Below, piece after piece: positions 29,171 to 63,214 of a stretch of DNA of 64,000 nt. Made by a program: the position numbers and the translations under genes. The first letter of the stretch is position 1. Each line of letters starts with the position of its first letter. This DNA is from Schmidtea nova (lineage: Eukaryota). The notes below the pieces were generated by a model. It saw nothing but the letters and a program-made list of their open reading frames with translations, searched no databases and was not told the origin of the DNA. Where the stretch lies: positions 182,094,001 through 182,158,000 of the forward strand of contig CM097883.1 of assembly GCA_044892505.1 (NCBI GenBank), read 5' to 3'.

Positions 29171-29277
29171 TGCGTTTAAATTTTCTTGTTTTACTTCATG
29201 TATTAAGCATTCATATGCATAGGATCAATTATTCTGAACTAGAGAGATAAAATAATCATTTACCAAACTATTTCAGT

Positions 29278-42137: not shown

Positions 42138-42156
42138 TGGGGGCTCAGCCGGGATC
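42138..42156 (+). promoter_or_regulatory. Primer-binding site, tRNA-Pro-like
   Basis: TGGGGGCTCAGCCGGGATC, 6 nt after the LTR end. It is complementary to a tRNA 3' end GATCCCGGCTGAGCCC-CCA and close to the canonical Pro PBS TGGGGGCTCGTCCGGGAT. Confidence 0.8.
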
Positions 42157-42484: not shown

Positions 42485-42946
42485 ATGGAGGAAAAACTGA
42501 AAGAAATCGAGGAATTTTTCAACACCAAGAACGATACATTTGAGACAGTCTGCGAAAAAATAACCCGAATAAGAGCATCCGAATATGAGGAACCTACGAC
42601 ACAAACTGAGGAAACAACTGAGTTAATAAAAATCATAGAGAAAGTAAATAAACTCGATATAAATACGCGATATAAATGGTACAAAGCACGATTAGAGGAT
42701 GCCGAGTTGAATATCAGATGCCGACATATAGAACAGCAGTTAAGCCTAACATATAACCGATGGACGTCGCAAGGGGTCGAGGCAGCAAAACAATATAAAC
42801 AATGTTACATATGCGAAAACAGTGAAATCCAAATAATGTTTTTACCATGTGGACATTTTCGATTCTGTAAAAACTGTGCGAATAAGTGTGATGAGTGCCC
42901 CATGTGCAATTTCTCTGTAGCTGATAAAATTGTAGTTTATTTATAA
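42485..42946 (+). CDS. Accessory protein with a C-terminal IAP/Mdm2-type C3HC4 RING (153 aa)
   Basis: CYICENSEIQIMFLPCGHFRFCKNCANKCDECPMCNFSVADKIVVYL* at the extreme C-terminus; no BIR domain seen. Confidence 0.88.
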   Translation: MEEKLKEIEEFFNTKNDTFETVCEKITRIRASEYEEPTTQTEETTELIKIIEKVNKLDINTRYKWYKARLEDAELNIRCRHIEQQLSLTYNRWTSQGVEAAKQYKQCYICENSEIQIMFLPCGHFRFCKNCANKCDECPMCNFSVADKIVVYL

Positions 42947-43419
42947 TAAATATTTAGAGTGTTAATATATTGTATCGAATGACAAAGTCAAGGGAGCAAT
43001 CAACAATGTTAATTAATTTTTGAGCTACTGTCAAGTAGTCCGTTAAGCACCCATTGGGAGGTACCAGTTGATCAACCCACTCGGGGTATATAGAAAGGGG
43101 CCAATCGCAAATGTTGGAAAGCTTTTGTGATGTGATTGATCACCACATCCCGCATTAGTAGACCAACGCGATCTTTTTGTATATTTTGGTTGGGGAGAGA
43201 AATAGGGAAAACCCTGATGAGGTAAGATGCGCGCAGAGAAAATAATAAAAATTGAATTATGACTGATCAGCGAAAGAATTAGTAATAAAACAAAGAATCG
43301 AGGAATTGTAGAGAAAAATAAGAGGTGCATAATCAGCTCGCATGAAATTGAGAGAACTCAGCTGAGAAATTGTAGTCGCTAGCGAAGTTAAGAATTACGA
43401 TTAACCGGTTAAGGAAAAG

Positions 43420-43633
43420 TTATCAGCGGGTTGTCCCTTGAAACAAAGGGTTATTAGAATTTGTCCCTTGAAACAAAGGGTTATCAGCGGGTTGTCCCTT
43501 GAAACAAAGGGTTATTAGAATTTGTCCCTTGAAACAAAGGGTTATCAGCGGGTTGTCCCTTGAAACAAAGGGTTATTAGAATTTGTCCCTTGAAACAAAG
43601 GGTTATCAGCGGTTTGTCCCTTGAAACAAAGGG
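43420..43633 (+). repeat. Array of 7 CCCTTGAAACAAAGGG hairpin cores in alternating 31/30-bp units
   Basis: Cores start at 43435, 43465, 43496, 43526, 43557, 43587 and 43618. Confidence 0.95.
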
Positions 43634-43639
43634 TTGAGG

Positions 43640-43825
43640 CCAAAGAGCCATATTGAATGACCTAGCTAGGCGTTATTGAGAGATATGATTTAAGGCCAAT
43701 AGAGCCATTTGAGATAATTGAGATATGAATTTAAGGCCAATAGAGCCATTTGAGATAATTGAGATATGAATTTGAGGCCATAAGAGCCATTTGAGATAAT
43801 TGATATTAATTAGAGGCCAAAGGAG
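43640..43825 (+). repeat. ~41-bp tandem repeat (AGGCCAATAGAGCCATTTGAGATAATTGAGATATGAA-like), about 4 copies
   Basis: Direct sequence. Confidence 0.85.
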
Positions 43826-43849
43826 CCAATAGGGATATCCGGATATATA

Positions 43850-44062
43850 GTAACGGAGGGAATATAGGCCCAGGGTTACAATTGTTGAGTAGCAACGGAG
43901 GGAATATAGGCCCAGGGTTGCAATTATTTAAAATTAAAGGAAGATAGTAACGGAGGGAATATAAGCCCAGGGTTACAATCGTTTGAGTAGCAACGGAGGG
44001 AATATAGGCCCAGGGTTGCAAGTGATAAGAAATAACAACAGAGGGAATATAGGCCCAGAGTT
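43850..44062 (+). repeat. Five copies of AACGGAGGGAATATAGGCCCAGGGTT with variable spacing
   Basis: Direct sequence. Confidence 0.88.
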
Positions 44063-44612
44063 GTGATCGTCGACGATAATGAGAATAGTGCGCACCGATA
44101 ATAGAGAAATGCGAGTAAAGCTGATTATGCGACCTAAAATAATGCATGCAAGTAGAATCGAGAAATAGGAGCTGACCGGAAAGACCGGCAGAATTAATAA
44201 TTAGAGGCTAGCAGAGAGAAAGATAAAGAGATGAAAAAATAATAATCGAGTCAAATGACTCAGGGAATTAGAGCGTTCGAACGACAAATAAATTGGGAGA
44301 CCGCGGGAAAAATAATCGATGTATTTTAATAACCGATAGATAATTGTTATGACTAAATAGATAATTGTGACTAGTATATAGATAATTTAAATAGACTTAA
44401 ATAAAGGGGAATCTGGGAATGGGGAAAAATAATAGAAACCCAGTAATGAGAAGTCCCGTAAAAAGGGAATAAAAGCGCAACGATAACAATAGAGTATCGT
44501 TGAAGTGACATTTGTATTTTAGATAAATCAATCAAACCAAACCAATCAACTAAGGAAGAAAAGAATCGGAACACGATAAGACAGGAAAATTGAGTATACA
44601 AAAGTAATCCCG

Positions 44613-47489
44613 TTGAGAAAAGGAGAAAAGAGTGTCATAATAAAACCAGCAGAAAAGAATAAAGCTACCAAGAATAATAATCAGAAAGGCCCAAAAGGAA
44701 GTAAAGCAAGGCAGATAATAATACAAAAGTCGATTATCGAAAACGATAAATTATCAGTAACAAGCAACAGTTCAAGCAACAAAGAAAATCAAGCAGAACC
44801 CGAGAGAAACCCAATAAGTGAAATAGAAGTCGACAAAACCAACAACGATTATATAGAAGAAATAGAAGACGAAGTAGAACAAGAAACAGAAAGTGACGAT
44901 ACCGATAACGATAGTAAAGCATCAGATAACGAATCAGCAAAGGAAACTGAGATCGACCGAAATTCAAGTGACGAACCTAACAGTGAACTAGAAACAAGAG
45001 GAAACGAAAGTAAAATAACTACAGACAGCGGAATCGAAATGAGTGAACCAAGAGAAGAGATAAAAGACAAATTTTCCGGAGAACCGTTTAATGGAGATGC
45101 GAGTAAATTAGAAACTTTCTTAAAGGAATTTGGCATATTCGTGGAAGTATGCAAGTGGAAACCAGAAACAACTGTAAGCAGAATTCAGCTATATTTGAAA
45201 GATAGCGCATTAGATCTATATTTGGAAGCAAAGAATGGAACTAATCCACCTACAAGTTGGTCAGCGATAAAGGACTTTTTCCAACAAACCTTTGGAATAA
45301 ATAAAGTATTGAATGAGGCATTCACGGAATTCTCAATGAGGAAACAAAAGATAAATGAATCGAATGCGGTATATGCAAGCGAATTGAAAAAGTTAGCAAA
45401 GTTGATCTTTAATCAAGACAGCCCAATAAATGAGGAGTTAATGGCAGCTATCTTTGTGGGAGGATTAAGAAGACCCGACATAAGAGCGCAAGTTGGATGT
45501 CAAGGTTGTAAAACCATCGACCAAGCACTAGAAACAGCTAATAGATTTGAACTACACATGATAGGAAATGACGGTAGAATCTATTTAGCTATGGATACAG
45601 CACAAAACGAACAAGAAGTGAACCTGAATAACCACATTCCAAATTCACAACAATTAAACCGACCACCACCGCAACGAAGGAATGAAGGGAATAAAGTATC
45701 AAATTACGGAAATCAAAACAATTACAACCCCCAAGGACCAACGAAACAATGCAAAACATGTGGGAAATTGGGACATTGGCAACAAGAATGTTATCAGAAC
45801 TTGAATTGTGGAAAATGTGGAGTAAAAGGGCATTCAGAGAGCAGATGTTACACAATAACCTGTTTTAATTGTGGACGACCTGGACACCTATCAAGAAATT
45901 GCGGACAAAGAAGCAATCAACGAGGAAGCTGGCAGAATACCGGAAACCGACAAAACTATGGAAACCAACCAACTGGTGGAAACCGACAGAATTATGGAAA
46001 TCAGCCAAATAATGGAAACCAGCCGGAATACGGAAACCAACCAAATAGTAATAATAATAACCAAAATAAAAATACCACTAAAGAGATACATTTAATGCAA
46101 GAGGTTCAAAGATTGACGGAGCTGATAAACAATACAACCAGAGGAAATCCGCAAACAGGTCAACAACAAATCAATATGATGAGAAAAATAGAAAGCGAAA
46201 ACGAACGATTGAATCGGGAAAGTCAAGCACGACATGCTCAGGAATGGGCAAGAATACAAAGAGAAGAGGAACAAAAACAGCAAGAAAGAGAACGACAACC
46301 TCTAAGAATTAATATGATGAGAGCAACCAATCAAACAAATACCCACGAGAAAGAGACTGTACCAGAAATAAATCCAACAAACCCGAATCCAACCAACAAC
46401 GAAGGCCGAAAAGAGATAATACAAGAAGATGAAGAAGCAGAAAAAGAAACAGAAAAGGAAGTAGAAAAAGAAGGGAACCAAGAAGAGAAAAGGAAACTCG
46501 GGAAAAGAGGAATGATGGTAATTTTGCCAAACAAGCACGTGTTTCGATTCCAATATAACATAAAAGAAGAAGTAGAAATATTGTTCAATAAAGTGAATGA
46601 AATGGCTCCAGGAGTAACGAAACTGCCCAGAGAAGCATTCCTAAAAATAGAAGGTGCACCAGAAGTAAAATTGAAACTAACGGATACATGGGAAAACCTG
46701 GGAGTAGTAGAGACAAAAAGAAATGTGATGGTAATCAAGGAAATAGAACCAGAAGGAATTCCATCGCCAGTGCGTCACGAAACACGAATCAGTCGAATAT
46801 TTAAAGGGAAAATGATACGAAGACGGTTGGGAGAAATAGACGAGTTAGAACGAAAAATGAGAAAGGTCGGAGTAGTAGACGACAAGAGTGAATCAACACA
46901 AAAAGCTATTAAAAGTGAAACAAGACCAACGGAAAATACACCAAGTGAAATCAACCAAATAAAACACATTAACATGTTGAGAGGCCAGGCAAAGAAATTC
47001 TCAGATGACGAAGAGGATAGTGACGTCAGTAGTCTAGCCGGAGATATGCTAAACGAACCGGAAATTGAAGACAAAAAGATAGAAGTAGTAAAGACACCAG
47101 AAACTATTCAAGTAAAAGAGGACGAGATCCAGAAATTATTAGATAACGCGCTAGAAGTAATATATAATGAGGAATTCATCGACAAGAAACACTACCGGAA
47201 ATTCATGAGAGCAATATTACAAATGAACTATAAAGAGTGGTTACCAGGCCGGGAAGTAGAAACACTAAGCCAATACGTAGGAAAATTATTAAAAGAACCA
47301 CTCCATGAATATATAATACTAATAGAGATAAAAACATGTTTGCCAAGGATTTGGATCAAAACTCCACTCACGGAAGATATTTATCAATGGGTGGAAGACA
47401 GATTAGGGAGTTCATATAAAAACAAATTCCTCTATTCACAGAATGGACTAGTGAAGAAAAGGACGCATTTGATAGAAACAGGCATATGA
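44613..47489 (+). CDS. Gag part of the giant polyprotein: acidic N-terminal region, capsid-like domain, three CCHC knuckles, N/Q-rich and charged regions, start of a ubiquitin-like domain
   Basis: The frame is open from 44580 and the first in-frame ATG is 45039 (MSEPREE..PFNGD..LETFL..F); the true start is uncertain. Knuckles CKTCGKLGHWQQEC, CGKCGVKGHSESRC and CFNCGRPGHLSRNC lie at 45750-45902. Confidence 0.88.
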   Translation: MRKGEKSVIIKPAEKNKATKNNNQKGPKGSKARQIIIQKSIIENDKLSVTSNSSSNKENQAEPERNPISEIEVDKTNNDYIEEIEDEVEQETESDDTDNDSKASDNESAKETEIDRNSSDEPNSELETRGNESKITTDSGIEMSEPREEIKDKFSGEPFNGDASKLETFLKEFGIFVEVCKWKPETTVSRIQLYLKDSALDLYLEAKNGTNPPTSWSAIKDFFQQTFGINKVLNEAFTEFSMRKQKINESNAVYASELKKLAKLIFNQDSPINEELMAAIFVGGLRRPDIRAQVGCQGCKTIDQALETANRFELHMIGNDGRIYLAMDTAQNEQEVNLNNHIPNSQQLNRPPPQRRNEGNKVSNYGNQNNYNPQGPTKQCKTCGKLGHWQQECYQNLNCGKCGVKGHSESRCYTITCFNCGRPGHLSRNCGQRSNQRGSWQNTGNRQNYGNQPTGGNRQNYGNQPNNGNQPEYGNQPNSNNNNQNKNTTKEIHLMQEVQRLTELINNTTRGNPQTGQQQINMMRKIESENERLNRESQARHAQEWARIQREEEQKQQERERQPLRINMMRATNQTNTHEKETVPEINPTNPNPTNNEGRKEIIQEDEEAEKETEKEVEKEGNQEEKRKLGKRGMMVILPNKHVFRFQYNIKEEVEILFNKVNEMAPGVTKLPREAFLKIEGAPEVKLKLTDTWENLGVVETKRNVMVIKEIEPEGIPSPVRHETRISRIFKGKMIRRRLGEIDELERKMRKVGVVDDKSESTQKAIKSETRPTENTPSEINQIKHINMLRGQAKKFSDDEEDSDVSSLAGDMLNEPEIEDKKIEVVKTPETIQVKEDEIQKLLDNALEVIYNEEFIDKKHYRKFMRAILQMNYKEWLPGREVETLSQYVGKLLKEPLHEYIILIEIKTCLPRIWIKTPLTEDIYQWVEDRLGSSYKNKFLYSQNGLVKKRTHLIETGI

Positions 47490-50400
47490 CCAGGAGAGGT
47501 GACAACACTATCGATATGCGATGATAAGAGAGAAGAGAACCTACAAGAAGTAGCAAAGGAAGCAAATATGTGTTTCGAGAAGAAGATAAAACCACGGTTA
47601 GAATATGAGAAAGGACGAATCTTACGAGGAAATCTAAATTCCATGATAGAACAAATCATCCCACAAATCAAAAAACATAGAAAGGAGTTAATGAGAAGCG
47701 AATACGAAAAGTTGAAACGATGTATCGAATGCATACGTGACACAAGTCACACGAGATGGTCACAGATCTCATACGGAAAAGTAATTGCAAAAATGGGAAA
47801 AGCAATGTTCAGACAAGGGAAAATAACAGATCTGAAAATTGCAGTAGAGTTACCTAATGAGGATACCAAAGAAATTGAAGTGGTAGCAGATTGTACCATA
47901 AAAGAATTAGTAAATGTCATCAACGAGACACTATTACAAAGAGAACCAGAAGAAGAATGGGAAGATGACATAATCATGAAATACAACGAACATGTATTAT
48001 GGGATCACGATGAAAGACGGCTATATAAAATTGGTATATGGGATAATCACCAAACCATCCACGTTATCAGAATGGACGATACACCAAGAGAAACTGCTAA
48101 AGATGAGAAAAGAGAACGGGAACGAAAAAAAGAAGTTGTGCATAAATTACAACAAATAGTAGACATTTATCGAAATTGGCGGATTTGGCCAGAATGGGAA
48201 GACGTATTAGAAGAACTCAATCTCAACAGACGATTACCAACACCTGTAGAAAAACAATGGAACGAACGAGGAAAATGTTGGGAACCAAAAGCAGGCGAAT
48301 ACGAAGAGGAATACGGAATAGGCATAGAAGACGATCACAAACCGGAAACCGGAAGAGTCTGTATGGTAACAAGAAAAGCCATGCCAGCAGATTTAGACGG
48401 ACCAGAAACGACAACCATGTGGTTGGAAAGAGAAAAACAAAAAACGGAAGAATTTGTCGAAATATTAAAAACCAATGCGCACGGCAAGAGAAAAGTAGTA
48501 AAAGGTCTCGCAGATTTTTTCGTAGTTAATGGAGAAGACATAACATGCTTGCGTAAAGTAGCAAAAGCAATCGCCGAATACAAAAGAGTTAACGAGTGGT
48601 GTCCAGAACAATTGGATCACGTAATTAAAAAATGGAGAAACCAAGAATTCTCGCAGGAATCGCCACAGAAAGTACACCTAAGAATAGTATATCCGAACCA
48701 GGAAAAGGAAGAGTTTTGGGTAGGGATAGCGGAGAAAGTTCGAGACATTAAAAAGAAATTGAGATATGAACCACCATTCCATTTACAACACCAAGGACGA
48801 TCATTAGATAACAGCTTGGAAATTGGAATAACGCCAGCGCAATTAGATATCGCAAATACATTGACAGTGGCAGCAATAGCAGGCCAACCATTGAAATTGA
48901 AAGAGGAAAAGAAACCAAAGGGAAGTATGAGTACGCCGAGCCCAATGAAATCGGTAATGACTCCAGGAACAAGCTCAGAACAAGCTAGAACAACACCAAG
49001 AGATACAAGAGAAAGAACACCACCAGAACCATACGATGTAGACGAAATTTTTACAGATAGCGATGATATGTTAGAGGAGTTAATAGAGCTAACAAAAGAG
49101 AAAGATGATAATATTTTCGAAAGAATTCAAGAATTACCAACAGCAATACCGGTAACCAACACCGAAGATGAAGTTGAACAAGAAATAATCATCGAAGAAG
49201 TTAATGAAATAGCAGAAGAGGAAGCAAGGAGGGCAAATGTAGAAAATGTACAATTCACACAAGAAATGGAAAGATGGTTAGAAGAAAGAGCCAATGAACC
49301 AAGAGACGTTACAGAAGAAACTGGACGAGAAACAAGATTAGTAGAAACGGGCACGACAATGGATAAACGACCTAGAGGTAGACCCAAGATGGATCCAGCA
49401 AATGTAGTTATAAAATCAAGAGAGGAAAAAAGACGGGATCAATGGGATTTGTGTCTAAAGAAACTAAATAAAATAGCCGAAACGAAAGAAAAAGAAACAA
49501 CACAAACATACCAAGGCGAGGAATGGATATCAAAGATGTTAATGGAAATACTGGCAATAATCGATCCGGAATTAAAGAAATGGTGGAGAATAAACGAAAT
49601 AAGCGAAAGGGCGAAATCACTGCATAGCGCCATCGCACCAATCCTACCAGAACTAATAAAAGAGAAGACAAGGTCAAACCACCTAGATTGGCAAGGAACC
49701 ACGATGTTGATAAAGAAGTTAACGGAAGGAGCAGAGACGGATAACAAATATTTAATAGCTATAGCATACACCATCTACAATCTGCTGACACTGAGTAGAG
49801 GTCGACTGAAACCTACAGCACTCGAAAGACATATAAAGAATACAGCCAAAATTATAGAGAAAGAAATAGAACCGTACATCATCAGTAAAGGAGGATGGGA
49901 AACATTCACAAAAACGAACCAAAAGAAAAACCAAGCCAAAAATATGAAAAAGAAATTCGAAGAGATATTGGGAGAATTGGAAAAGGAAAAGTCGGGAACA
50001 GGAAACGGGAAATCATCACTAAACCTGAGTTCTATCATTATGATGATGTTAATATGGATGATTAGTACTGACGGAGCAACAGCATTTGAAGTATTCGATT
50101 GTGATCAAATGGCATTAGGTGAGAAATATTCACTACGAGGGACAGAACAATGTAAGGACGCAACCCCAACGGAGTTAAAAACATTAAAAAAGAGACAATT
50201 ATACCACGTATATCAGGAAGCTGAACTGATAAGAACAATGGTCAGGGAATGCAAAGTTTATAAAACCAGATTTGCTTTTTATTGTGGACACCGCCATTAT
50301 TCAGCAATCGTGATGCCAGGAACGGAAAGAGAATCGGTAATGCTGCAAGGAGAAGACTGTGAAAAATTATTTAAACATGGAGAAGTAGAGACTAGAGATA

Positions 50401-53400
50401 GAGTAAAGATAAGAGGAAAAACGGGAGTGATATTGCAACAAACATATTATGTAGCAGGAGCTATTACGGGAGGAGAAGGGTACTGCCAAGGAGCAACTTA
50501 TCCAATATTCGGAGTAGCAGCAACAAACCTAGTGGTAATAGATACGTATACAGTGGAACTAAAAACGTACGAGGCATTCTTCGATCCAACGACGGGAGAA
50601 ATGAAAACTCTACCTATGTGCAAAATCGAGTCAAACACTTGTCAGACTGGTATGTCAACCCTAACCTACCAGATACGAGGAAAGGAATGTCAACTACAAC
50701 TGTTAAAGGAAGCAGAATTCGATGAGATACAAGGGAAAACCTTCCAAGAGGAAGAAGAAGACGAGGCAGCAAGAGGAAAAATACTTCAAGACACAGTACG
50801 GGGAGAGAAAAAGATTGAAACCCGAACACAAGAAAAACAAATTAAAATGAGAAATACACCAACGGTACTAATTACCTCAGATGCAGATATCGGAATGAGG
50901 TTTGTAAAAGGAAAAACAGCCTTGAAATGCGGAGTAGCTATGTTGGAAACCAACTACCCCGGCATTTTTGTATCAAAACAAGAAGTACCTAGTGCGAAAC
51001 GCAAAGTGCACACGAACGATGTTAAATTACACCTTTACATGAACAATAAAATGGATTTTCTGTTCCATAGAGGACAAGCGTCACTACAAAAAGTGTATTA
51101 CGATTTAATTAACAACGATTGCATATTAAATAGGGAAATATTAAAGACAAAACTAGCGGTAGCAATCACAAACCCGGATAGTGCAATGCCATTATTACCA
51201 TTAAGAGAAGGTCATTTTGGAAGGGTAGTCGGAGAGGTCATGTACGTATACATATGTAAAAAGACAAATGCGAAGGTAGCGACAATGACAAAACTACAAC
51301 CAGGTCAGTGTACTAACGAACTAGAAATCGAATATAAAGGGAAAGTAAGATATGTACAACCAGTGACAAGAATCATAAATCCAATAAGCTTCGAACCAAA
51401 TCCTTTCAATTGCAGCAACGCATATGGACCACTATACCAAAAACCAGACGGAAATTGGGTTATGTTTCCGTCAAGAACAGAGGTACCAGCACCAAGGGAA
51501 TTTGAATTGATGCAACTATCAAAAGGACGAAAATTTAAAGACGTAGACGTAAGCAATATGGGATTCTATAACGCAAAGGATTTAGAAGCAGCAAGACAAA
51601 ACATACTATTTCCGGCAAGACGAGAAGCGGTGTTATCCAGTATTGTAACAATAACAGGAGGAACAAATTACCAAGGTGGACCAAATTACGAATTATTATT
51701 GTCACCAGCCCACTTTAAGAAGGCAACGGAAAACATGATGAAAGCGATGTGGGGAAGATTTTTAATATTTGGACAAATGATGGCAGGAATACTTGGTGTT
51801 ATACTAATTATACAAATAATACGGGTAATAATAACGCAAATGTTAGCCTGTTTTGACATCTATAAAAGAGAAAAGAAAGTAAATTGGAAATTGGTGGTAG
51901 GATTCTTACCATTTCTGGCTAAAACAATGGTATTACACGGTCATTCGAAAGATATTCACCGAATAAAGAGACTCCTAAAAATACTGGCAAAAATGAAAGG
52001 AACCGATGAAGAGGTGGGACGAAAGTTTAAAAAGATAATGAATAACGAGCAAGCAAGACAACAACTAAAGAAAGAGAGAAAAGGACTATGGGAAAGAATG
52101 AAAGGGTACAGAACCCAAGACGATTCCAGTGACGACGATGATGATGATAACGAAGGAGGTCAAGTATTTAAAAATCAAGTACCACAGTATGTCGAAAAGA
52201 ATCCAGCGGAAATGTGGAAATGTTACGCACCCCCACCGACCATGTACCAAGAACCAACACCAGGGATGAGACAAAATACAATGCAAATGATGCCGATGAC
52301 AAACATATATCCTATGATACCAGAAGACTATAGAACGAGACGGTGCAGAAGCGTAGATCCGCAAGGAGACTCACATACAATTGCAGTAATGTCATCAAAC
52401 ACCGGTCCAGTATTAACTACAACAATCGAAATTAACGGAAGGGAAATAGAAGCGATGATCGATACAGGAGCAAATATCTCAGCAATAGATATAAAATGGA
52501 TACCACAAGAACAAAGACGGGATATTGAGAGAACCAACGTTCACGTAATAGCATGCAGTAAAGAAGTAGTAGAAGTTGCCGGAAGATGGTGGGTAAAGAT
52601 AAAACATCAAAACACGGAAATCGAAACGTACGTAGCAGTAATACCAGCACTGAGCGTACCATGCATTATAGGTACGGATCTGATGCCAGCATTATTTAAA
52701 GAAATAGTTATTGACCTCGGAACAATGAGATTAAAGGATAGGACAGGACAGATATGCGCAATAGAAGCAAAAGTAACAAGTTCGAAACAAATAATCGTAC
52801 CAGCACGGAGAGAGAAAATATGTTTCGTAAAAATAGATCCTACAATAGAAGGTGACATGATCTTTGAACCCAGTAAAAGATTTGAAAAGAGAAAGTCGTT
52901 GCCAATGGCAAGGGGATTAGTGAGTGCGAATGACAACGGAGAAATCCCGATAAATGTAGTAAATTTCGATGAGGAGGATAAAATAATTTATGAAAATGAA
53001 AGATTAGGTAAACTAACTCCAATGATAGATATCGAAATACCAATAAAAGAAGGAGTAAAAGAGGAGGAACCCACTTGGAACATTAATAGCCAACTATTAA
53101 ATGAGGACCAAAAGAAACAGCTAGAAAGATTACTGATGGAATATAAAGACATATTCGCAGCATCCGATTTAGATTTAGGGACATGCGACGTCACACTACA
53201 TACGATTCCACTAACAGACGAAACGCCGATTGCGTTAAGACCATACAAGTTAGCTGAAGCGCAAAAATCAGTAGCAGAAGCAGAAGTACAGAAAATGCTA
53301 GACGCAGAAGTAATTGAACCAAGCTGCTCACCGTGGCAGTTCCCAGTTGTAATGGTGAAAAAGAAAGACGGAACACAACGATTTTGTATTGATTATCGGA

Positions 53401-56400
53401 GATTAAATGCAGTTACAAAAAGGGATACATACCCATTACCGGACATCAACGAGATGTTATTGACATTACAAGGAGCGGCATATTTTACATCATTGGATTT
53501 GAAAAGCGGATACTGGCAAATTAAAATGAAAGAGGAAGACAAAGAGAAAACTGCTTTCACTATCGGAAGAGACTTGTACCAATTTAGGAAAATGCCATTC
53601 GGACTAACCAATGCGCCAGCATCATTTCAAAGATGTATGAATTTCGTTACCCACGGCATAAAACAATGCATGGTTTACATTGACGACCTACTGATCTACT
53701 CAAGCACATTTGAACAACACATCCAAGATATCAGAGATGTATTTGTTAGATTGAGACAATGGAAACTCAAGCTCAAACCATCGAAATGCGATTGGGCAAA
53801 AGAGAAAGTGACATTCTTAGGACATATTGTGTCCGCAAAAGGAAAGGAACCAGATCCCAGAAACATTGATAAAGTAAAAGAATGTCCAGTACCAAAGACG
53901 ATAACGCAGATCCAAGAATTTCTCGGATTATGCGGTTACTATAGAAAATTCATAAAGGATTACGCAGGAATTGCAAAACCAATCCAGGAGCTAGTAAAGA
54001 AAGACGTATCGTTCATATGGGGAAGCGAACAACAAACAGCCTTCGAAACATTACGAGATAAGTTAATAACTGCACCAATATTGGTTCACCCGGATTTTAA
54101 AAAGCCATTCTTACTCGCAACCGACGCAAGTGGATATGCAGCAGGAGCAGTGTTAGGACAATATGATGACGAGGGAAAAGAGCGGGTAATCGGATATTAT
54201 AGCAGAACATTCAAGAAACACGAGAAGAATTATTCAGTAACGGAAAGAGAAGCATTGGCAATAATATTAGCAATAAAACACTTTAAATATCTATTATGGG
54301 GACACATTATATGCATAACCACAGACCATCAACCACTTGTATGGCTAGGACAACATAAGGAAACATCCAGCAGATTAATGAGATGGGCGATGCAATTACA
54401 AGAATATTCACCAGATATAAAATTCAAATCAGGAAAAGCGAATGCCAACGCAGATTGTATGTCAAGATTAACGTTTCCAGAACTAACAGACCCAGAAGTG
54501 CAAAGAATATGCATAATGATAGCAGAGGACTTGGATTTCAGTGAGTTAAAGAAAGATCAGCAAGAGGATAAAGAACTAAAACCCATCATAGAATTTCTAA
54601 GCTCACGAAATATGGATGTATTCGAAGACAATGCGGAGTTAAAAGAACACATGAGGAAATACCAACACCGATACACAATAGAAAAAGGATGGTTGTTAAT
54701 ACAAGATGGAGAAAAACGATTAATGTGTCTGCCAAGTAATAGACGAAAAGAGATAATAACTCAATACCATGACGGAAAGCTAGGAGGACACATGTCCTCT
54801 AAGAAAACATTAGATCGTATGAGACAGAAATATTATTGGCCAACAATGGACGAAGACGTAAAGGAATGGATAAAGAACTGTTTAACTTGTGCCACAAGAA
54901 AGGATAGTGGGAAGAAATGGAAAAATCCCTTAAAACCCATGCCAATACCAGCGGAACCAATGACTACCATTGCGATGGATGTAATAGGACCATTGCCAGA
55001 AAGTTTAAACGGGAATCAATATATATTGGTAATAACGGATTATTTGACTAAATTCCCTGAAGCATTTGCGATGCCGGATCAAAAAGCAAAGACGGTAGCA
55101 AGAATTTTAGTAGAGGAAATATGTTGTCGATACGGAACCCCGAAACAAATACTAACAGATCAAGGAACAAATTTTATGAGCGAAATACTAGATGAAGTAA
55201 CAAATTACTTCAGAATAGCCAAATTACGAACGTCACCATATCATCCGCAAACCAACGGGCAAACGGAAAGATTTAACGGCACATTGATTCGAATGTTATC
55301 CAATTATGTAAGCAAACACCAAACAGATTGGGATGAATACGTAAAGCTATGTCTAATGGCATACCGAATGTCGATACACGCAGCAACAAAATTGAGTCCA
55401 TTTCAATTAATGTATGGAAGGGAATGCAATATGCCAATAGATCTTGAATATCAACCACCTTTGTCTCAATATATGGAGGAAGATGATTACGTCACCAAAT
55501 TCAAAGAACGAATGCAAGAGATATGGAAGACAGCAGAACTAAACATAAAGTTTTATCAAGAAAGTTACAAGGACCTACACGATCAAAAGAAAAATGTTAA
55601 AACAAATGATCTTAAACCCGGAGATTGGGTAATGATAGAAACCCCAGAAATAATACCAGGAACCGTTAAAAAACTACAAAGACCAGGAAAAGGCCCTTAC
55701 GAAGTTATATACAAAAAGGAAAACAATGTGAAGGTAAAACTTGTTAATCGACCATTGATACGACCAATATACGTTAATACATGCAGATGTAAAAAAGTAC
55801 CAAAGACAATAACCACAGCGCCAGAAGAACGAATAATAACCAGATCCCAGACAGCCAGAATGAATATGCTCAGAGCAACCAATGAAAGTACCGAAGCAGA
55901 GAACAATCAACGAGGAAAAAGAAACAAGGAAATTGTACTAAAAGCCAGAGAAATAATGGGAAAATGGCATGTCAGAGACGATATATTAAGAGATATTCAG
56001 TCGATAATTAGTGATTACGCAAGGGGACTACCAACAAAACCAGTCATTTCAGAACTACTGGAAAAGATTCCAGAAATACTTTCACTAGAAGACATAGGAG
56101 GACAACCAGCATTACATAACGCCATAAAATGGGGAGAAGTAGAGAGAGTAAAAGAATTTCTAAAAATCGCTAAGGAAACAAACCAACACCTTGGTTTTGG
56201 GAATAGCGAACAAGAAACACCATTAATGGTAGCAGCCATCTACAAATCGGATAAAGCAATAATAGACCTTTTGATAAATGCCGATTTCAACTGGACGGAA
56301 CGCGATAGAGAAAACAAAACAGTCTTGAATCACGCAATATGGAGCTCAAATCAGATAATGCTCAAACAAATAATCGAGAAGGCCACTTGGGAAATAGACG

Positions 56401-59400
56401 AACTGATCAAAGGTGATATAATCAAGGAGGCAATAAAAATCGGTAACTGCAAAACAATACGCAAGCTAATAAAATGGAAAAGATCCGAAAATGATACATG
56501 GGTGTTAAATATAAACGAGGTATACAGTGAAGGGCAAAACACGTTATTACAATTCCTATTAAAATTCGTTTGTGACCAGAAAGCACTGTTAACGTTATTA
56601 GACAGAAGAAATATCATAATTTCCAAAAACAAAGAGGAGTGTAAATTCGAAAGTGAAAAAGAAGCATTATTCAGGAAAATTAGGGAATGGTGTGCAAAAT
56701 CGCTAACCAAGACGATAACTTACAAAGATATATCCAATTTTCAAGATAAATACAAAACGGTGGAGGAAGAGTATGACAAACTAATAGACATATTAAACCA
56801 CCCCGAAAAATGCAAACAATTCCTATGTCAAAAGGAAAGAGAAAGCAAAAGGAAAGTTACACCACTTTTCAGCGCAGAGGTACCATATCAAGAAAGGTTA
56901 GATGCGATACAGGACAAAGCAAAAGAACTATTACCAGAATTCGAAAATTCTAAACATACACTGGAGATACTCGGATCAATTGTGGAAAAGGTACACGCAT
57001 ATGCGGAAGGAACTTACAATGAAAACGATATGATGATCATAAAAAGAGAAATGCCAGTGACTTTCTTATTAACAAAGAATGGAGTATTGCCAATACATAG
57101 AGCCTTACGAGCAGGAAAAAATAGGAGGGTAGTCGAAATTGCACGGTTGATGCAAGATTGCGGAAGTGACATGAACATGAAAGATAAAAAGGGAGACACC
57201 CTCATGATATTTGCAGCAAGAGCGAACACAAAAACCCGAGTGTTACAGGAACTGTACGAAGTAGGTGCAGGACTCATGGGAAGAACTAACAAAGACAGCT
57301 CAATACTAGACGTAGCGTTGTTAACGTACAATTGGGAGGTGATAAATTTTATAAAAACAATCACAAATCAGGAGGAAATAGAATACCTTACAAGGAGAGT
57401 TAAAAAAGCTAGCGTACATTCCATGATGCATAACGCTGAACTAACTGAAGTAATACTCAATTGGATGAACCCAAACACCAATGAACCAGCATTCAGGATC
57501 AACGAGTGCATGGAACAAGGCCAGAATTTATATATAAAGTGTGCATTAATAATAAACAAATGGCCAAACATAATAGACATCTTCATGAGAAGAAAAGATT
57601 TACGATTCACAAACAACCCAAAGGAAACAGAACGTACGGACAAATGGAAAGAACTAATGAAAACGTACCTTAATAATTGGATAAAAGCCAAGAAAGAGAT
57701 TCTAGATTGTAAATTAACCGATAAGGAAATACCTAAGCAGGCAGTAACACAAGAATATGAAGCAAGTATACTCACAACCATAACGTATGAAAAAATGATA
57801 GAAGCAATTAATGTCGAGGACGACATTTTCAACGACCAAAGGGGAGGCGACAATACAGGAAACGACGACGATAGTACTCGAGAAAATCCAGAGGATCATG
57901 AGTTACTAGATAAAGAGGACAGTGAAGAGAAAGGAAGGGACACAGAGAAAAATGATAAGAAAAATGAATTTGGGAAACAAAGAAACAACAACTATAAAAA
58001 TAAAAACGAAGTAAAAAGAACAGGCTACAAACAAACAATAAACCCATTCTTTAAACCAGAACTATTATTACTAACGATAATCATGACCTTAATTAGTCCC
58101 ACTCAAGGAATGATATGTGAAGAAAGAGCGACAATACAAATTGGAAACGCAAAAGGAATCGAACGAGTATGTTGGTCAAAAAAGGACAAAATCTCGGGAC
58201 AAAATAGTCCAATGGATTGCAGGATCTCAGAATACGAACAAGAAATCATAGAGATCGATGACCTAGAGCTAGATACTTGGTACAGAATGTGCACCGTTCG
58301 GAAACCAAAGGATCCGAGATCACATAAGACAATTGCATGTGCAAATTACCTAACACCCAAAGTAACCATAACAGTACAGCAGTCATCCAAAGGAGACTAT
58401 GTCGTAGGAAAGTGTGGAAGAACAGAGACACAAGGAACAAAAAACAAGAAACCTCAGACAATAGACAGACGAACAACGCCAACTATACAAATTACCATAG
58501 ACAGGCCCGAAGTAAGAGTAACCACAAATGAAACTGAAAGAGTGACCTACCAAACAGAATTACTATGTTTAGCACTCATATTAACAATGTTAAAACGGTT
58601 AGAAGAAGGGATAGACATTGACACAATGGCAGTAACAGAGATGAACGACACCCAAAACACCAACCCAAAGTGTTGGGCCAGAAGCAACGAAGAAATTGGC
58701 GTAAGCGAAATAAAGACGAGTCGGAAAAGGAAAACAAATAAAGTAACCAAGATATCAGAAGTAAAAGCAGACAGGACGTATGAACTATGTTTACTAGAAA
58801 AAGAAAGACACAAGAAAGGAACGACAATTTGTAAAACATTTCAACCTGGGGAAACAATAAAGTTCATACGACGAGGAAGAAGAAATAAACGCACCAAACG
58901 GAGAACAACTATAATGTTAGAGTTAACCGGAATAGAACCGGACGTCAAAGGCGTATGCTGGAAGAAGCAGGAAAAGAAAACAAACCAGAATACACCGCCG
59001 CAATGTCGAACAAACAGAGGAACAACCACAATACAGATAGAAGGGTTAGAAAGTAATCAAACGTACGAAATATGCCTGATCAGGAAGAGCGACAAAATAA
59101 CAGTAAATGAACTGGAATGCAAAATATATAAAACACCCACCGGAACAAGAATTGGAAAGACAACGCGAAAAAGCAGAAGACAACGGAACAAAGGAAAAAC
59201 GAGGTATACCACTACTTTTAAACCTAATGGACAACAGAAAAACCAAGAAATACAAATAAAAACCGAAAAGAATACTACAGCAACTCTTATACTATGGAGA
59301 ATAGACAATAAAACGTTAGAAATATGTTGGGCAGTAGTCCAGGAACAAAAAGAAAGACAGCCACGATACTGCGAAAACGTAAAAGGAAAAGAAGAAATGA

Positions 59401-60127: not shown

Positions 60128-60484
60128 ATGAACGAACAGGAAGAAATAGCAGAAACTACTATGGCTATGCGATGGAAAGCCCAGTGTGACATGTTAATAC
60201 GAACAATCAACTCACTACAAAATCAGTTAATTGAGAAACAGAATTTGTTATCCGAAAGTTATAATAATAGTTTTGAACAACTCCACAGAATCGAGGAGCA
60301 ACAGAGATTGATAACGCAACTTACCAGAGAGAATCAAGTGATGAGCGACATAAATCAGAGACAAGCAATAGAGATAGACCGTTTAACAATGGGAGAGACA
60401 GAAGAAGCAGAGGATGGATGGACAAATTGGGCAATAAACAGATCAGAAAATGACCCAGAACCAGATTCAACAAACGAGCCGTAG
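60128..60484 (+). CDS. Small coiled-coil accessory protein (118 aa)
   Basis: Intact ATG ORF preceded by an AG acceptor-like site; heptad Q/E/L-rich. Confidence 0.7.
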   Translation: MNEQEEIAETTMAMRWKAQCDMLIRTINSLQNQLIEKQNLLSESYNNSFEQLHRIEEQQRLITQLTRENQVMSDINQRQAIEIDRLTMGETEEAEDGWTNWAINRSENDPEPDSTNEP

Positions 60485-60575
60485 ATAAATAAAGCGAAAA
60501 ATTGTAAATATGTAAAAACAAAAACAAGAAAAATCAAAAAATAGATAACAAATCAAGTGTATATATCATTGTAGA

Positions 60576-61958
60576 ATGAATACAGAAGGAAAAGCCGAAG
60601 AGCGGATAATCGAAATTTTGAGAGCCGAGAACAGGAAATGGAGTCAGAGACTCACTTGTGTAAATTGTAAAAACATAATATTGAAACCAAGACAAACCCT
60701 ATGCGGATGCAGAGTATGTACCAAATGCATACACGAGTTAAGTATGAAAAGACCACCAGAATGTCCAGAATGCAAAGAAGGACAAATAAAATTCGAAGAA
60801 ACCGGACCAGATAGAGCAACTCAGAGAGAAATCATGAACACGAAAACCGAATGTATAAATCAACCATGTATATGGCAAGGACAAATACGCGATCTCGAGA
60901 ACCATCTGGAGAACTGCGAGGAGAAGAGAACCGAATGTAACAAATGCCAACAAAAAATAACTATAAAGAATAAAGAGCAGCACAAAGATGAATGCAAAGA
61001 AGAGGAAAGTCTATGCGAATATTGTGGAACTCGAGAAACGAGGAGAAAGATCGAGGAAGAACACCTGAATGTAAAAGAGGAGAAAGTATGTAGACAATAT
61101 GTAGGAATATGTTCAAACGAATGCGAGATAACGGCAGAAGTAAAATTACAAGAACATTGGAAAATGTGCACGGAGAAACCAAGGGAATGCCCTTATAACA
61201 AACAGGGATGTATGGAGAAAAGAACGCAAAAAACCATGAAACAACATCTGGAGGAAGCATTGCTAAAGCATGCGGAAATGACAAACGAAGCAACAAAAGA
61301 AACCGAACAAACAATCAAAAAATTAGAAAGAGAAATAGAGTCACACAAGATAATGGTAAACCTACTGTTGGAAACCAGAGAGCAATTCGAACTAACACGA
61401 GAAAAGATGGAGGAAAAGATAAAAGCTATCGAAGAATTGGCTAAAGGAATGAAAATCCAGTACAACAAACTCACCCAGGATACCGAAGAAAAGTTACCAA
61501 TCGCACCATATGTGTGGAAAGTGACAGATTTTAGAAACAAATTAACAGAGGCCAGAAATATGACGAAAACAGCAGTAATAAGCCCACCATTTTATTTATG
61601 GAGAAACGGAGCTAAAGTGAGATTGAAGCTATACCCAAATGGAGACGGAAGAGGACGAGGAACACATGTGTCAATATTTTTCTCGCTATGTAAAGGAGAA
61701 TACGACGACCTAGTAGAATGGCCCTTGAAAGTAGGAGTCATTGTAAGAATCAGAAGTGTAACAAAACCAGTGGAAAAATTCTTTGAGACAGAGAAACATG
61801 CGAGTACGAGCGAGAAACCAACCACAGAATGCGGATTAGCAGCGGGAGAACCGATGTTTATAACGAAAGAAAGCCTATGGGAACGATTATATGCAGACAC
61901 CCTATACATAGAAATGGAAAGGAATGAGAAAGCAGATAGAAAAGGATGGCTGACGTAA
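60576..61958 (+). CDS. TRAF-like protein (RING, TRAF zinc fingers, coiled coil, MATH), 460 aa
   Basis: CVNC..PRQTLCGCRVC..C..CPEC RING; C..QPC.W.G...L..H...C finger; MATH motifs WKV.DF, SPPFY, LYPNGDG.G.GTHVS.F, EWP. Confidence 0.92.
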   Translation: MNTEGKAEERIIEILRAENRKWSQRLTCVNCKNIILKPRQTLCGCRVCTKCIHELSMKRPPECPECKEGQIKFEETGPDRATQREIMNTKTECINQPCIWQGQIRDLENHLENCEEKRTECNKCQQKITIKNKEQHKDECKEEESLCEYCGTRETRRKIEEEHLNVKEEKVCRQYVGICSNECEITAEVKLQEHWKMCTEKPRECPYNKQGCMEKRTQKTMKQHLEEALLKHAEMTNEATKETEQTIKKLEREIESHKIMVNLLLETREQFELTREKMEEKIKAIEELAKGMKIQYNKLTQDTEEKLPIAPYVWKVTDFRNKLTEARNMTKTAVISPPFYLWRNGAKVRLKLYPNGDGRGRGTHVSIFFSLCKGEYDDLVEWPLKVGVIVRIRSVTKPVEKFFETEKHASTSEKPTTECGLAAGEPMFITKESLWERLYADTLYIEMERNEKADRKGWLT

Positions 61959-62071
61959 CAAGAGAAGTGATCATGTAAATAATATGTACAGTTAAATACC
62001 CAAAAATTATTATATAAACAAAAATAACTGATATATAAACCGATTAAAATTTTCATTCTGTAATTTTAGCA

Positions 62072-63133: not shown

Positions 63134-63214
63134 ATAAAGCGGAAAATATATTTTTGTAAATAATTGTATGAAATGTAGTGTCAAATTGTATTGACCTATC
63201 TGTAAAGAAACAGT

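What the first reader, a model, noticed from the sequence alone, without database searches (positions are those of the whole stretch)
50019..51860. Chuvirus-like class III fusion glycoprotein placed between gag and protease
Seen: an internal signal peptide (LSSIIMMMLIWMISTDGATA|FEVFDC), a Cys-rich ectodomain and a TM segment. The ectodomain has ECKVYKTRFAFYCGHRH, YMNNKMDF...LYYDL-like/DC.LNREIL, GRVVGEVMYVYIC and CTNEL. Established: this pattern resembles chuviral (Jingchuvirales) gB-like glycoproteins, which are known to have been captured by BEL/Pao elements. Retroelement env genes normally lie 3' of integrase in their own ORF. Inference: an independent env capture by a Gypsy lineage at an unorthodox position, in frame with pol.
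Basis: partly seen in the sequence, partly recalled or inferred. Interest (0 to 1): 0.87.

Follow-up and report, generated by a model that had tools for sequence, protein, structure and literature searches.

The report
Burro-type giant retroelement's built-in envelope protein
The flagged stretch really encodes a herpes-gB/chuvirus-type membrane-fusion protein sitting in frame between gag and protease of a giant Ty3/gypsy retroelement, but this layout has already been published for planarian 'Burro' elements and flatworm, nematode and bryozoan 'errantiviruses'.

Summary
Window 50019-51860 lies inside one uninterrupted 4167-codon ORF (47499-60002). It encodes a signal-like segment, a 564-residue ectodomain and a strong TM helix.

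Evidence that it is a chuvirus-like class III fusogen:
- It matches Pfam PF24664 (Monjiviricetes_fusion) at E 1.5e-67.
- Its nearest named viral relatives are chuvirus glycoproteins.
- An AlphaFold2 model (pLDDT 89) matches only herpesvirus gB in the PDB (E 4e-13) and chuvirus G best in BFVD (E 9e-37).

The host element is Ty3/gypsy; its RT-IN matches yeast Ty3 at 1e-119. It carries gag with three CCHC knuckles, PR-RT-RH-IN, ankyrin repeats, and RING and TRAF/MATH accessory ORFs. More than 21 kb of internal sequence lies in the window.

That is the architecture of planarian Burro/GYPSM1 elements. Arkhipova & Yushenova (2019) already reported env in frame between gag and pol there. Chary & Hayashi (2026) describe GAG-ENV-POL, gB-type Ty3/gypsy elements in flatworms, nematodes and bryozoans.

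The closest relatives (28-46% identity) are also embedded in gag-env-PR-RT-IN polyproteins. They form a 100/100-supported group apart from chuviral and BEL/Pao-linked glycoproteins.

Verdict: real and correctly read, but already known. Host species and the exact published family were not identified.

The parts
42139..42156 (+). Candidate primer-binding site (18-mer starting TGG). It marks the approximate 5' start of the internal region; the 5' LTR bound is not defined.
   Evidence: Read. Untested: there is no tRNA gene in the window and no LTR pair in the window. The A-rich strand skew begins at about 42000 and runs to 64000.
42485..42946 (+). Upstream accessory ORF (153 aa) with a C-terminal C3HC4 RING finger.
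   Evidence: Pfam zf-C3HC4_3, E 2.3e-11.
43419..44063 (+). Leader tandem-repeat arrays (61/31-nt, 41-nt and 43-45-nt units).
   Evidence: Burro elements are drawn with tandem repeats (PMC6431247, Fig. 2 legend).
44613..47489 (+). gag-like ORF (958 aa) with three CCHC zinc knuckles. It is in the same reading frame as the next ORF and closed by one stop codon.
   Evidence: Pfam zf-CCHC, E 3.7e-8.
47499..60002 (+). Giant uninterrupted ORF (4167 aa): accessory N-terminal region, env, PR, RT, RNase H, IN, ankyrin repeats and a C-terminal membrane module. No breaks.
47499..50018 (+). N-terminal 840 residues with no family assignment. By eye there are ubiquitin-like and BCL2-like stretches, but these were not confirmed.
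   Evidence: No Pfam hit above noise; no PDB sequence hit for nt 49200-50018. Relatives P0002 and P0003 align upstream of the signal segment.
50019..50084 (+). Internal signal-peptide-like segment of env (ORF aa 841-862).
   Evidence: It is conserved in P0002 and P0003 and aligns with the N-termini of stand-alone glycoproteins.
50085..51776 (+). Env ectodomain (564 aa) with a class III (gB/chuvirus-G-like) fold.
   Evidence: Pfam PF24664, E 1.5e-67. AF2 pLDDT 89.4, pTM 0.72, with a 48-residue central helix. Foldseek PDB: gB, E 4e-13. BFVD: chuvirus G, E 9e-37.
51777..51833 (+). Env transmembrane helix core (ORF aa 1427-1445).
   Evidence: Hydropathy 2.57.
51834..51947 (+). Membrane-proximal cytoplasmic tail of env, conserved with relative P0002. 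The end is approximate.
   Evidence: Reading against P0002. In relatives the Pfam profile extends to position 650 of 653.
52419..52691 (+). Retroviral aspartyl protease.
   Evidence: Pfam RVP, E 4.7e-8, aa 1641-1731.
53355..54407 (+). Reverse transcriptase and RNase H.
   Evidence: Pfam RVT_1, E 3.8e-37; RT_RNaseH, E 3.3e-38. Ty3 RT 4ol8, E 5.9e-90.
54732..55304 (+). Integrase (H2C2 zinc domain plus catalytic core).
   Evidence: Pfam Integrase_H2C2, E 1.1e-22; rve, E 2.4e-10.
56112..56381 (+). Ankyrin repeats downstream of integrase.
   Evidence: Pfam Ank_2, E 1e-13.
58038..59999 (+). C-terminal orphan type-I membrane module: a signal-like segment, repeated 4-Cys units, 8 N-glycosylation sequons, a TM helix (aa 4088-4106) and a short tail.
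   Evidence: No Pfam hit and no homologue.
60576..61958 (+). Downstream accessory ORF (460 aa): TRAF-type zinc fingers plus a MATH domain.
   Evidence: Pfam MATH_2, E 5.1e-21; TRAF-mep_MATH, E 1.8e-18; zf-TRAF, E 1e-4.
60128..63787 (+). Further same-strand downstream ORFs: 60128-60484 and 62072-63133 (coiled-coil-like) and 63215-63787 (small TM protein). The element appears to run off the window end.
   Evidence: the strand skew continues to 64000.

Best explanation
The stretch is the envelope (env) module of a giant Ty3/gypsy endogenous retrovirus-like element of the planarian 'Burro' type. It encodes a complete type-I membrane protein, from signal peptide through ectodomain and TM helix to tail. 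The protein has the class III fusion-protein fold and is homologous to the glycoproteins of chuviruses and other Monjiviricetes, and more distantly to herpesvirus gB.

Shown:
- the sequence, the fold, the homology and the in-frame position;
- the same gag-env-PR-RT-IN order within single proteins of related elements.

Inferred mechanism:
- The long RNA is translated into Gag, which ends at its own stop. A larger product would arise if ribosomes pass that same-frame stop.
- When the internal signal segment emerges, the ribosome is targeted to the ER. Signal peptidase cuts after the small-x-small site and frees the cytosolic upstream part.
- The ectodomain is translocated and the TM helix stops transfer. 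PR-RT-IN therefore stays on the cytosolic side, tethered to the membrane until the element's protease releases it.
- This is the logic of flavivirus and hepacivirus polyproteins (core/E1 junction, PMC5402940).
- The trimerised protein would then serve as the fusogen of enveloped particles, allowing cell-to-cell spread.
For: Identity and fold:
- Pfam PF24664, 228.5 bits.
- 957 homologues. The ~650-700-aa tier at 22-29% identity includes named chuvirus glycoproteins.
- AF2 pLDDT 89.4. The top 50 Foldseek PDB hits are all gB, E down to 4e-13 over ~650 columns. BFVD top hits are chuvirus or chu-like G, TM up to 0.71.
- The profile against PDB sequences hits 34 distinct gB sequences, all in the central-helix region, and no other family.

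Element type:
- Ty3 Gag-Pol, E 1.4e-119.
- CCHC gag, PR, RT, RH, IN, Ank; RING and TRAF/MATH ORFs; leader tandem repeats.
- This matches the published Burro description, including env in frame between gag and pol (PMC6431247) and GAG-ENV-POL gB-type flatworm elements (PMC13524379).

Lineage trait:
- P0004, P0006, P0015, P0017 and P0018 carry env followed by PR/RT/RH/IN in one protein, and P0006 also has CCHC upstream.
- 100/100 NJ support for the group.

Integrity:
- 4167 codons without a stop.
- All 10 near-invariant Cys are retained.

Topology:
- The signal segment aligns to the N-termini of free-standing homologues.
- Basic residues follow the TM helix.
Against: - No expression, processing or particle data exist for this element, and signal-peptidase cleavage was not predicted with a dedicated tool.
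- Host species and 3' LTR are not in hand, so membership of a published Burro family is inferred from architecture only.
- BCL2-like, BIR and Smc motifs reported for Burro were not detected here by Pfam or PDB search.
- TRAF/MATH lies in a separate downstream ORF, unlike Burro-1 (inside the polyprotein) or the D. tigrina element (upstream ORF).
- gag is closed by a stop, so production of the large protein needs read-through or separate initiation. No notable RNA structure follows the stop (z = -1.6).
- There is only one N-glycosylation sequon in 564 residues.
- Global TM-scores to gB are only 0.35-0.45, as expected for multi-domain proteins in different conformations.
Confidence: 0.8

Rival explanations
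1. The protein is the same, but it is expressed differently. Env would be made from a spliced subgenomic mRNA that starts at a Met in or just before the signal segment, as in orthodox retroviruses. The in-frame continuity would then be incidental.
For: Several Met codons lie inside the hydrophobic core of the signal segment and one lies about 40 codons upstream. Relative P0003 has a Met followed by a basic stretch directly before its hydrophobic core. Separate initiation would also avoid the need to pass the gag stop.
Against: The frame is continuous from the upstream accessory domains through env into PR/RT/IN in at least five divergent relatives at 28-40% identity. That is hard to keep without selection on a fused product. 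No splice-site evidence was obtained.
Confidence: 0.3
2. Env is an inert relic, or a host-co-opted gene, rather than a working envelope protein of a mobile element.
For: Most endogenous env genes are decayed or domesticated. Only one copy was seen in the window. There is only one glycosylation sequon.
Against: The 12.5-kb ORF is intact, including PR, RT, RH and IN. All near-invariant cysteines are kept. The model is high-confidence and full-length. The gene sits in an element with gag, a leader and a candidate PBS, not in a host gene context.
Confidence: 0.1
3. A recent chance integration of a chuvirus glycoprotein fragment (an EVE) into one retroelement copy.
For: Chuvirus G-derived EVEs are abundant in arthropod genomes (PMC10084718 and PMC7642597). 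The P0037 cluster includes beetle genome copies.
Against: Identity to any stand-alone or viral G is only 19-29%. The closest relatives, at 28-46%, are all embedded in the same way in Ty3/gypsy polyproteins and form a 100/100 group. The frame is perfectly continuous on both sides.
Confidence: 0.02
4. A cellular membrane protein with only superficial resemblance to viral glycoproteins.
For: None was found beyond the generic type-I topology.
Against: Every significant sequence, profile and structure match is to a viral or retroelement fusion glycoprotein.
Confidence: 0.01

Closest known systems
Burro / GYPSM1 giant Ty3/gypsy LTR retrotransposons of planarians (Jurka 2007; Grohme et al. 2018; Arkhipova & Yushenova 2019, PMC6431247)
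   Same: - A giant internal region and a multi-thousand-residue polyprotein.
- Gag with three CCHC knuckles, then PR-RT-RH-IN and ankyrin repeats.
- RING and MATH/TRAF modules, and tandem repeats.
- Env in frame between gag and PR, with hits to mononegavirus fusion glycoproteins.
- An AT-rich host genome (PMC11410931).
   Different: - Here gag is a separate ORF in the same frame, closed by one stop.
- TRAF/MATH is a separate downstream ORF and RING a separate upstream ORF.
- BIR, Smc, BCL2-like, dUTPase and SUMO-like motifs were not detected by Pfam.
- The 2019 paper likened the env to gypsy (F-type) Env by HHpred, whereas the fold here is class III.
- Host species and sequence identity to published Burro families could not be tested.
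GAG-ENV-POL 'errantiviruses' with HSV/gB-type ENV in Platyhelminthes, Nematoda and Bryozoa (Chary & Hayashi 2026, PMC13524379; nematodes first in Sacco et al. 2022 as cited there)
   Same: A Ty3/gypsy pol, a gB-type class III env placed between gag and pol, and conserved cysteine architecture.
   Different: That survey only accepted elements with LTRs 5-14 kb apart, so giant elements like this one fall outside its search window. It treats ENV as an ORF next to POL, whereas here env is fused in frame on both sides.
Jingchuvirales (chuvirus) glycoproteins; Pfam PF24664 Monjiviricetes_fusion
   Same: Full-length homology from signal peptide to TM helix, shared cysteines, and the best structural matches (E 1e-37 to 1e-29, TM 0.55-0.71).
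   Different: Identity is only 19-29%. The Pfam score is 228 bits, against 620-725 bits for core family members. The window env falls in a separate, 100/100-supported clade of retroelement-embedded proteins.
Mosquito BEL/Pao elements that captured a chuvirus-like glycoprotein (Dezordi et al. 2020, PMC7642597)
   Same: An LTR retroelement carrying a Monjiviricetes-type class III glycoprotein.
   Different: - A different retroelement superfamily.
- Env lies in the canonical position after integrase (P0052: DUF5641 followed by G).
- Their G is close to the Pfam core, and it is no closer to the window env than exogenous chuvirus G.
Herpesvirus glycoprotein B (e.g. PDB 2gum, 5cxf, 6esc)
   Same: The class III fold aligned over ~650 columns (E ~1e-12). 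There is weak but specific sequence similarity in the central-helix region.
   Different: About 10% identity and TM 0.35-0.45. gB works with gH/gL, and no such partners are evident here.
Internal signal peptides in flavivirus/hepacivirus polyproteins (HCV core-E1 junction, PMC5402940)
   Same: A cytosolic structural protein is followed in one polyprotein by a signal sequence and then an envelope-protein ectodomain. This offers an analogy for how the env could be released.
   Different: This is an analogy only. There is no homology, and processing of this polyprotein has not been observed.

Membership tests
Pfam PF24664 Monjiviricetes_fusion (viral fusion glycoprotein) | Whole-protein score above the curated gathering cut-off (27 bits). 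| tested here: met
   228.5 bits, E 1.5e-67, two stretches; the best covers aa 1115-1456 against profile positions 242-579 of 653.
Class III viral fusion proteins (gB / rhabdovirus G / gp64 type) | A multi-domain beta-rich ectodomain with a long central helix (the class III fold). | tested here: met
   AF2 pLDDT 89.4, pTM 0.72, helix at residues 315-362. Foldseek: 114 PDB hits at E<=1e-3, and the top 50 are all gB with probability 1.00.
Class III viral fusion proteins (gB / rhabdovirus G / gp64 type) | Type-I membrane topology: an N-terminal signal, a single C-terminal TM helix and a cytoplasmic tail. | tested here: met
   Signal-like segment aa 841-862 and TM helix aa 1427-1445 followed by basic residues. 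The signal is internal to a polyprotein rather than N-terminal.
Class III viral fusion proteins (gB / rhabdovirus G / gp64 type) | Internal bipartite fusion loops, a trimeric assembly and membrane-fusion activity. | not tested
   Only a monomer model was made, and model coordinates were not inspected for loops. Activity cannot be tested with these tools.
Jingchuvirales glycoprotein (a direct member, i.e. a recently captured chuvirus gene) | Nests within exogenous chuvirus G sequences with substantial identity. | tested here: not met
   19-29% identity to stand-alone or viral G. A separate clade together with embedded relatives, 100/100 NJ bootstrap. 'Chuvirus-like' holds; 'a chuvirus gene' does not.
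Ty3/gypsy (Metaviridae) LTR retroelement | PR-RT-RH-IN order with a Ty3-type RT/RNase H and an H2C2 integrase, and no BEL/Pao markers. | tested here: met
   Pfam RVP, RVT_1, RT_RNaseH, Integrase_H2C2 and rve. Yeast Ty3 Gag-Pol 7q5b, E 1.4e-119. No Peptidase_A17 or DUF1759 / DUF5641 hits.
Ty3/gypsy (Metaviridae) LTR retroelement | A pair of long terminal repeats, a PBS and a polypurine tract. | tested here: inconclusive
   No LTR pair in the window, because the element runs off the 3' end. A candidate TGG-initiated PBS lies at 42139-42156 but was not verified.
Errantivirus-like GAG-ENV-POL elements with gB-type ENV (PMC13524379) | The order gag, gB-type env, Ty3/gypsy pol on one strand with intact reading frames. 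| tested here: met
   gag 44613-47489; env 50019-51947 and pol 52419-55304 within one intact ORF.
Burro (planarian giant gypsy) | An internal region far larger than ordinary LTR elements, with a multi-thousand-residue polyprotein. | tested here: met
   At least 21.8 kb from the candidate PBS to the window end without reaching a 3' LTR. ORFs of 958 and 4167 aa.
Burro (planarian giant gypsy) | The accessory domain set: three CCHC knuckles, RING, MATH_TRAF_C, ankyrin, BCL2-like, BIR, Smc. | tested here: inconclusive
   CCHC x3 (read), RING, TRAF/MATH and Ank were found. BCL2-like, BIR and Smc were not detected by Pfam at E<=1 or by PDB phmmer.
Burro (planarian giant gypsy) | Env in frame between gag and PR. 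| tested here: met
   compared with PMC6431247.
Burro (planarian giant gypsy) | A host in the Dugesiidae, and nucleotide or protein identity to published Burro-1 to -4 / GYPSM1. | not testable with these tools
   No planarian genome or Repbase entry is reachable. A look-up with a non-element ORF found nothing. The window is AT-rich and TE-rich, which is compatible with a planarian genome but not specific to one.

The most novel reading that the evidence does not exclude
The element may be a still-active giant retrovirus-like agent with a two-component envelope.

- The first component is the class III fusogen. It would be released from the middle of the polyprotein by host signal peptidase, a flavivirus-style strategy not documented for reverse-transcribing elements.
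- The second is the orphan type-I membrane protein at the canonical env position (58038-59999). It has repeated 4-Cys modules and 8 glycosylation sequons, and could act as an attachment partner.
- RING, TRAF/MATH and ankyrin accessory proteins would manipulate host signalling.

My evidence does not exclude this reading, and it does not show any step of it.
Probability: 0.15. Interest if true: 0.7.

Novelty: already known. Interest (0 to 1): 0.27.

Why it matters
It is a clean, fully intact example of a class III viral fusogen built into a retroelement polyprotein. It supports the view that envelope-carrying Ty3/gypsy elements with gB-type env are an old and widespread lineage.

It also sharpens the 2019 annotation of Burro env: the fold is gB/chuvirus-like (class III), not gypsy-F-like (class I).

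The open questions are how a membrane protein is expressed from the middle of a polyprotein of about 5000 residues, and what the second membrane module at the C-terminus does. As a discovery claim, however, the gag-env-pol placement is not new.

Tried and rejected
- Single-sequence phmmer of env against PDB sequences found nothing. Only the 120-sequence profile reached gB.
- The first AF2 run, with a 4-sequence alignment, failed (pLDDT 39) and was discarded. The second, with 120 sequences, succeeded.
- The word-indexed homologue search found only 3 proteins because of its length window. The exhaustive representative search was needed.
- BCL2-like domain upstream of env: Pfam at E<=1 and PDB phmmer were both negative, so it remains only a visual lead.
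- LTR search: no pair in the window.
- PBS check: no tRNA gene in the window.
- Read-through signal after the gag terminator: no notable RNA structure.
- Host identification: an exact-protein look-up with a non-element ORF gave nothing on record. The supplements of PMC13524379 are not held, and Grohme et al. 2018 is not held.
- C-terminal membrane module: no homologues and no self-BLAST repeats.
- Other copies of env or pol in the window: none.

Steps deliberately not taken:
- I did not fetch DNA loci of relatives or of chuviruses, because of the bar on fetching animal viruses by any road. Copy-to-copy DNA comparison was therefore not done.
- No sequence was read across the gag stop.

I stopped, sent none of them to any tool, and use none as evidence.

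The consensus lines that the alignment tool printed by itself were not used.

Full report
**1. What is at the coordinates**

Window 50019-51860 lies inside a single ORF, 47499-60002 on the plus strand, of 4167 codons with no stop. With the local base composition (43% A) the chance of such a run is about 1e-133.

The stretch has three parts:
- A signal-like segment, ORF aa 841-862. It has a 13-residue hydrophobic core and small residues at -3/-1.
- A 564-residue ectodomain, nt 50085-51776.
- A strong transmembrane helix, aa 1427-1445 (hydropathy 2.57), followed by basic residues.

'Cys-rich' is generous, at 14 Cys. However, ten of them occupy columns that are at least 90% conserved in 120 homologues. 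Only one N-x-S/T sequon is present.

**2. What the protein is**

Sequence evidence:
- Pfam assigns the region to PF24664, Monjiviricetes_fusion, 'viral fusion glycoprotein', at 228.5 bits and E 1.5e-67.
- An exhaustive phmmer search of 1.84 billion representatives gives 957 homologues in two tiers.
- The nearer tier (28-46% identity) consists of long proteins of 1300-3243 aa in which the glycoprotein is embedded.
- The farther tier (22-29% identity, E 1e-35 to 1e-20) consists of free-standing proteins of ~650-700 aa.
- Where sources give names, the farther tier includes the glycoproteins of Wufeng shrew chuvirus 2 and Tacheng Tick Virus 4, plus insect-genome copies.
- In these free-standing proteins the window's signal segment aligns with the N-terminus. 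The whole gene, from signal peptide to anchor, is therefore embedded here.

Structure evidence:
- A first AlphaFold2 run with four sequences failed (pLDDT 39).
- With a 120-sequence alignment the ectodomain folds with pLDDT 89.4 and pTM 0.72, and shows a 48-residue central helix.
- Foldseek against the PDB returns only herpesvirus gB in the top 50. E-values go down to 4e-13, probability is 1.00, about 650 columns align and TM is 0.35-0.45.
- Against BFVD the best matches are chuvirus and chu-like glycoproteins (E 9e-37 to 1e-29, TM up to 0.71). Next come other Monjiviricetes glycoproteins, and then gB.
- A sequence profile of the 120 homologues hits 34 distinct gB sequences in the PDB, all in the central-helix region, and no other family.

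The 'chuvirus-like class III fusion glycoprotein' reading is therefore confirmed by four independent kinds of test.

**3. What it sits in**

- Upstream is a 958-aa gag-like ORF (44613-47489) with three CCHC knuckles.
- It is in the same frame as the large ORF and is closed by one stop codon. No notable RNA structure follows the stop.
- About 1380 residues of unassigned sequence separate the knuckles from env.
- Downstream of env, in the same ORF, come protease, RT, RNase H, integrase and ankyrin repeats.
- The RT-RH-IN part matches yeast Ty3 Gag-Pol at E 1.4e-119, so the element is Ty3/gypsy, not BEL/Pao.
- A small ORF with a RING finger precedes gag. After the big ORF come a TRAF-zinc-finger/MATH ORF, two coiled-coil ORFs and a small membrane ORF.
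- Tandem repeats fill the leader.
- An A-rich strand skew runs from about 42000 to the window end.
- No LTR pair is in the window, so the element runs off the 3' end. At least 21.8 kb is internal.
- A TGG-initiated 18-mer at 42139-42156 may be the primer-binding site, but this could not be tested.

**4. Comparison with what is known**

This architecture is that of the planarian Burro/GYPSM1 elements. Arkhipova & Yushenova (2019, PMC6431247) describe the following:
- a 4873-5140-aa polyprotein;
- Gag with CCHC knuckles, PR-RT-RH-IN and ankyrin;
- RING and MATH_TRAF_C modules, sometimes as accessory ORFs;
- tandem repeats;
- an env region 'between BCL2 and PR' that hits fusion glycoproteins of arthropod and fish mononegaviruses.

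Chary & Hayashi (2026, PMC13524379) report that Ty3/gypsy errantiviruses of Platyhelminthes, Nematoda and Bryozoa carry only HSV/gB-type ENV, arranged GAG-ENV-POL. They argue that the association is ancient.

The window's AT-rich, TE-rich context fits planarian genomes (PMC11410931).

Membership of a specific published Burro family could not be tested, for three reasons:
- the host was not identifiable;
- BCL2-like, BIR and Smc motifs were not detected;
- the placement of TRAF/MATH and RING as separate ORFs differs from the two published layouts.

**5. Lineage trait, not a one-off**

Five divergent relatives (P0004, P0006, P0015, P0017, P0018) have env followed by PR and/or RT-RH-IN in one protein, and P0006 also has a CCHC knuckle upstream.

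A neighbour-joining analysis of 115 sequences over 508 columns groups the window env with the embedded relatives, with 100/100 bootstraps. Mean identity is 39% inside the group and 21% to everything else.

A BEL/Pao-linked glycoprotein (P0052, with DUF5641 upstream) is no closer to this group than exogenous chuvirus G is. This is consistent with an acquisition separate from the mosquito BEL/Pao capture (PMC7642597). It does not give the direction or date of transfer.

**6. How it most likely works**

Shown: a complete type-I fusion-protein gene, fused in frame on both sides, in an intact element.

Inferred:
- The internal signal segment targets the nascent polyprotein to the ER.
- Signal peptidase separates the cytosolic upstream part from env.
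- The TM helix stops transfer, so PR-RT-IN remains cytosolic until the element's protease cuts it free.
- This resembles the core-E1 junction of hepaciviruses (PMC5402940).
- The trimer then acts as the fusogen of enveloped particles.

The main rival is expression from a spliced subgenomic RNA that starts at a Met near the signal segment. The conserved in-frame continuity in relatives argues against it but does not exclude it.

**7. Limits and declarations**

- No breaks occur in env or pol. The only interruption in the gag-to-pol reading frame is the single gag terminator.
- The tool-printed consensus lines were not used.
- I slipped once in my reasoning by recalling short strings of known molecules from memory, when weighing the candidate PBS and a BCL2-like motif. 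I stopped, sent none to any tool, and rest nothing on them.

**8. Verdict**

The observation and the structural reading are right. The claimed unorthodoxy is real but already published. Interest is modest. The residual open points are the expression mechanism and the orphan second membrane module at 58038-59999.

Noticed in passing
window 58038-59999 (+), ORF aa 3514-4167: A second type-I membrane module lies at the canonical env position after integrase. It has a signal-like segment, three clear C-x15-C-x23-C-x15-C units plus a partial one, 8 N-glycosylation sequons, a strong TM helix (aa 4088-4106) and a short tail. There is no Pfam hit, no homologue at E<=1e-3 and no self-BLAST repeat.
   Followed up: partly
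window 60576-61958 (+) and 42485-42946 (+): Host-like signalling genes are carried as separate ORFs of the element: a TRAF zinc-finger plus MATH protein downstream of pol, and a C3HC4 RING protein upstream of gag. Their placement differs from both published Burro layouts.
   Followed up: partly
window 47487-47600 (+): gag and the 4167-codon ORF share one reading frame and are separated only by the gag terminator, a TGA followed by C. The downstream RNA fold is unremarkable (z = -1.6). Whether this reflects read-through or an inactivated copy cannot be told.
   Followed up: partly
window 28617-29754 (+), 33632-34731 (-), 40227-41604 (+): There are three diverged copies of an unassigned two-ORF unit, similar at protein level only. 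One ORF has a conserved RCPF-x-x-W stretch. The other is coiled-coil with a basic C-terminus. The third copy abuts the 5' side of the giant element.
   Followed up: no
window 22479-22627 and 26146-26294: 149-nt direct repeats, 97% identical and 3667 nt apart, flank an ORF (24213-25610) with RNase H-like and integrase domains plus DUF7047. This is probably the remnant of a small LTR element unrelated to the giant one.
   Followed up: no
window 127-2331 (+); 16482-16548: A 734-aa ORF carries a protein-primed type B DNA polymerase (PF03175) and an endonuclease VII-like N-terminus, which is Maverick/Polinton-like. A 67-nt repeat, 81% identical to its 3' part, lies 14 kb away.
   Followed up: no
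window 17807-18454, 21759-22319, 31493-31960 (-), 36859-37515 (-): Fragments of a hAT dimerisation domain and a DDE_1 transposase, plus two possible host exons: a TAF8 C-terminal domain and a bZIP protein with poly-N tracts.
   Followed up: no
relatives P0004, P0006, P0017 (proteins): Some embedded relatives carry an extra DDI1-type aspartyl protease domain (PF09668) directly after env, ahead of the retroviral protease. It was not detected in the window element.
   Followed up: no
window 3056-3322 and 7215-7352: Two runs of N (267 and 138 bases) lie inside very AT-rich, microsatellite-like sequence. They were left as they are.
   Followed up: no
ectodomain residues ~222-255 (about nt 50748-50849): A charged low-complexity insertion (acidic and lysine-rich) is the only long low-confidence stretch of the model (pLDDT 54-65). 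It varies in length among relatives.
   Followed up: no
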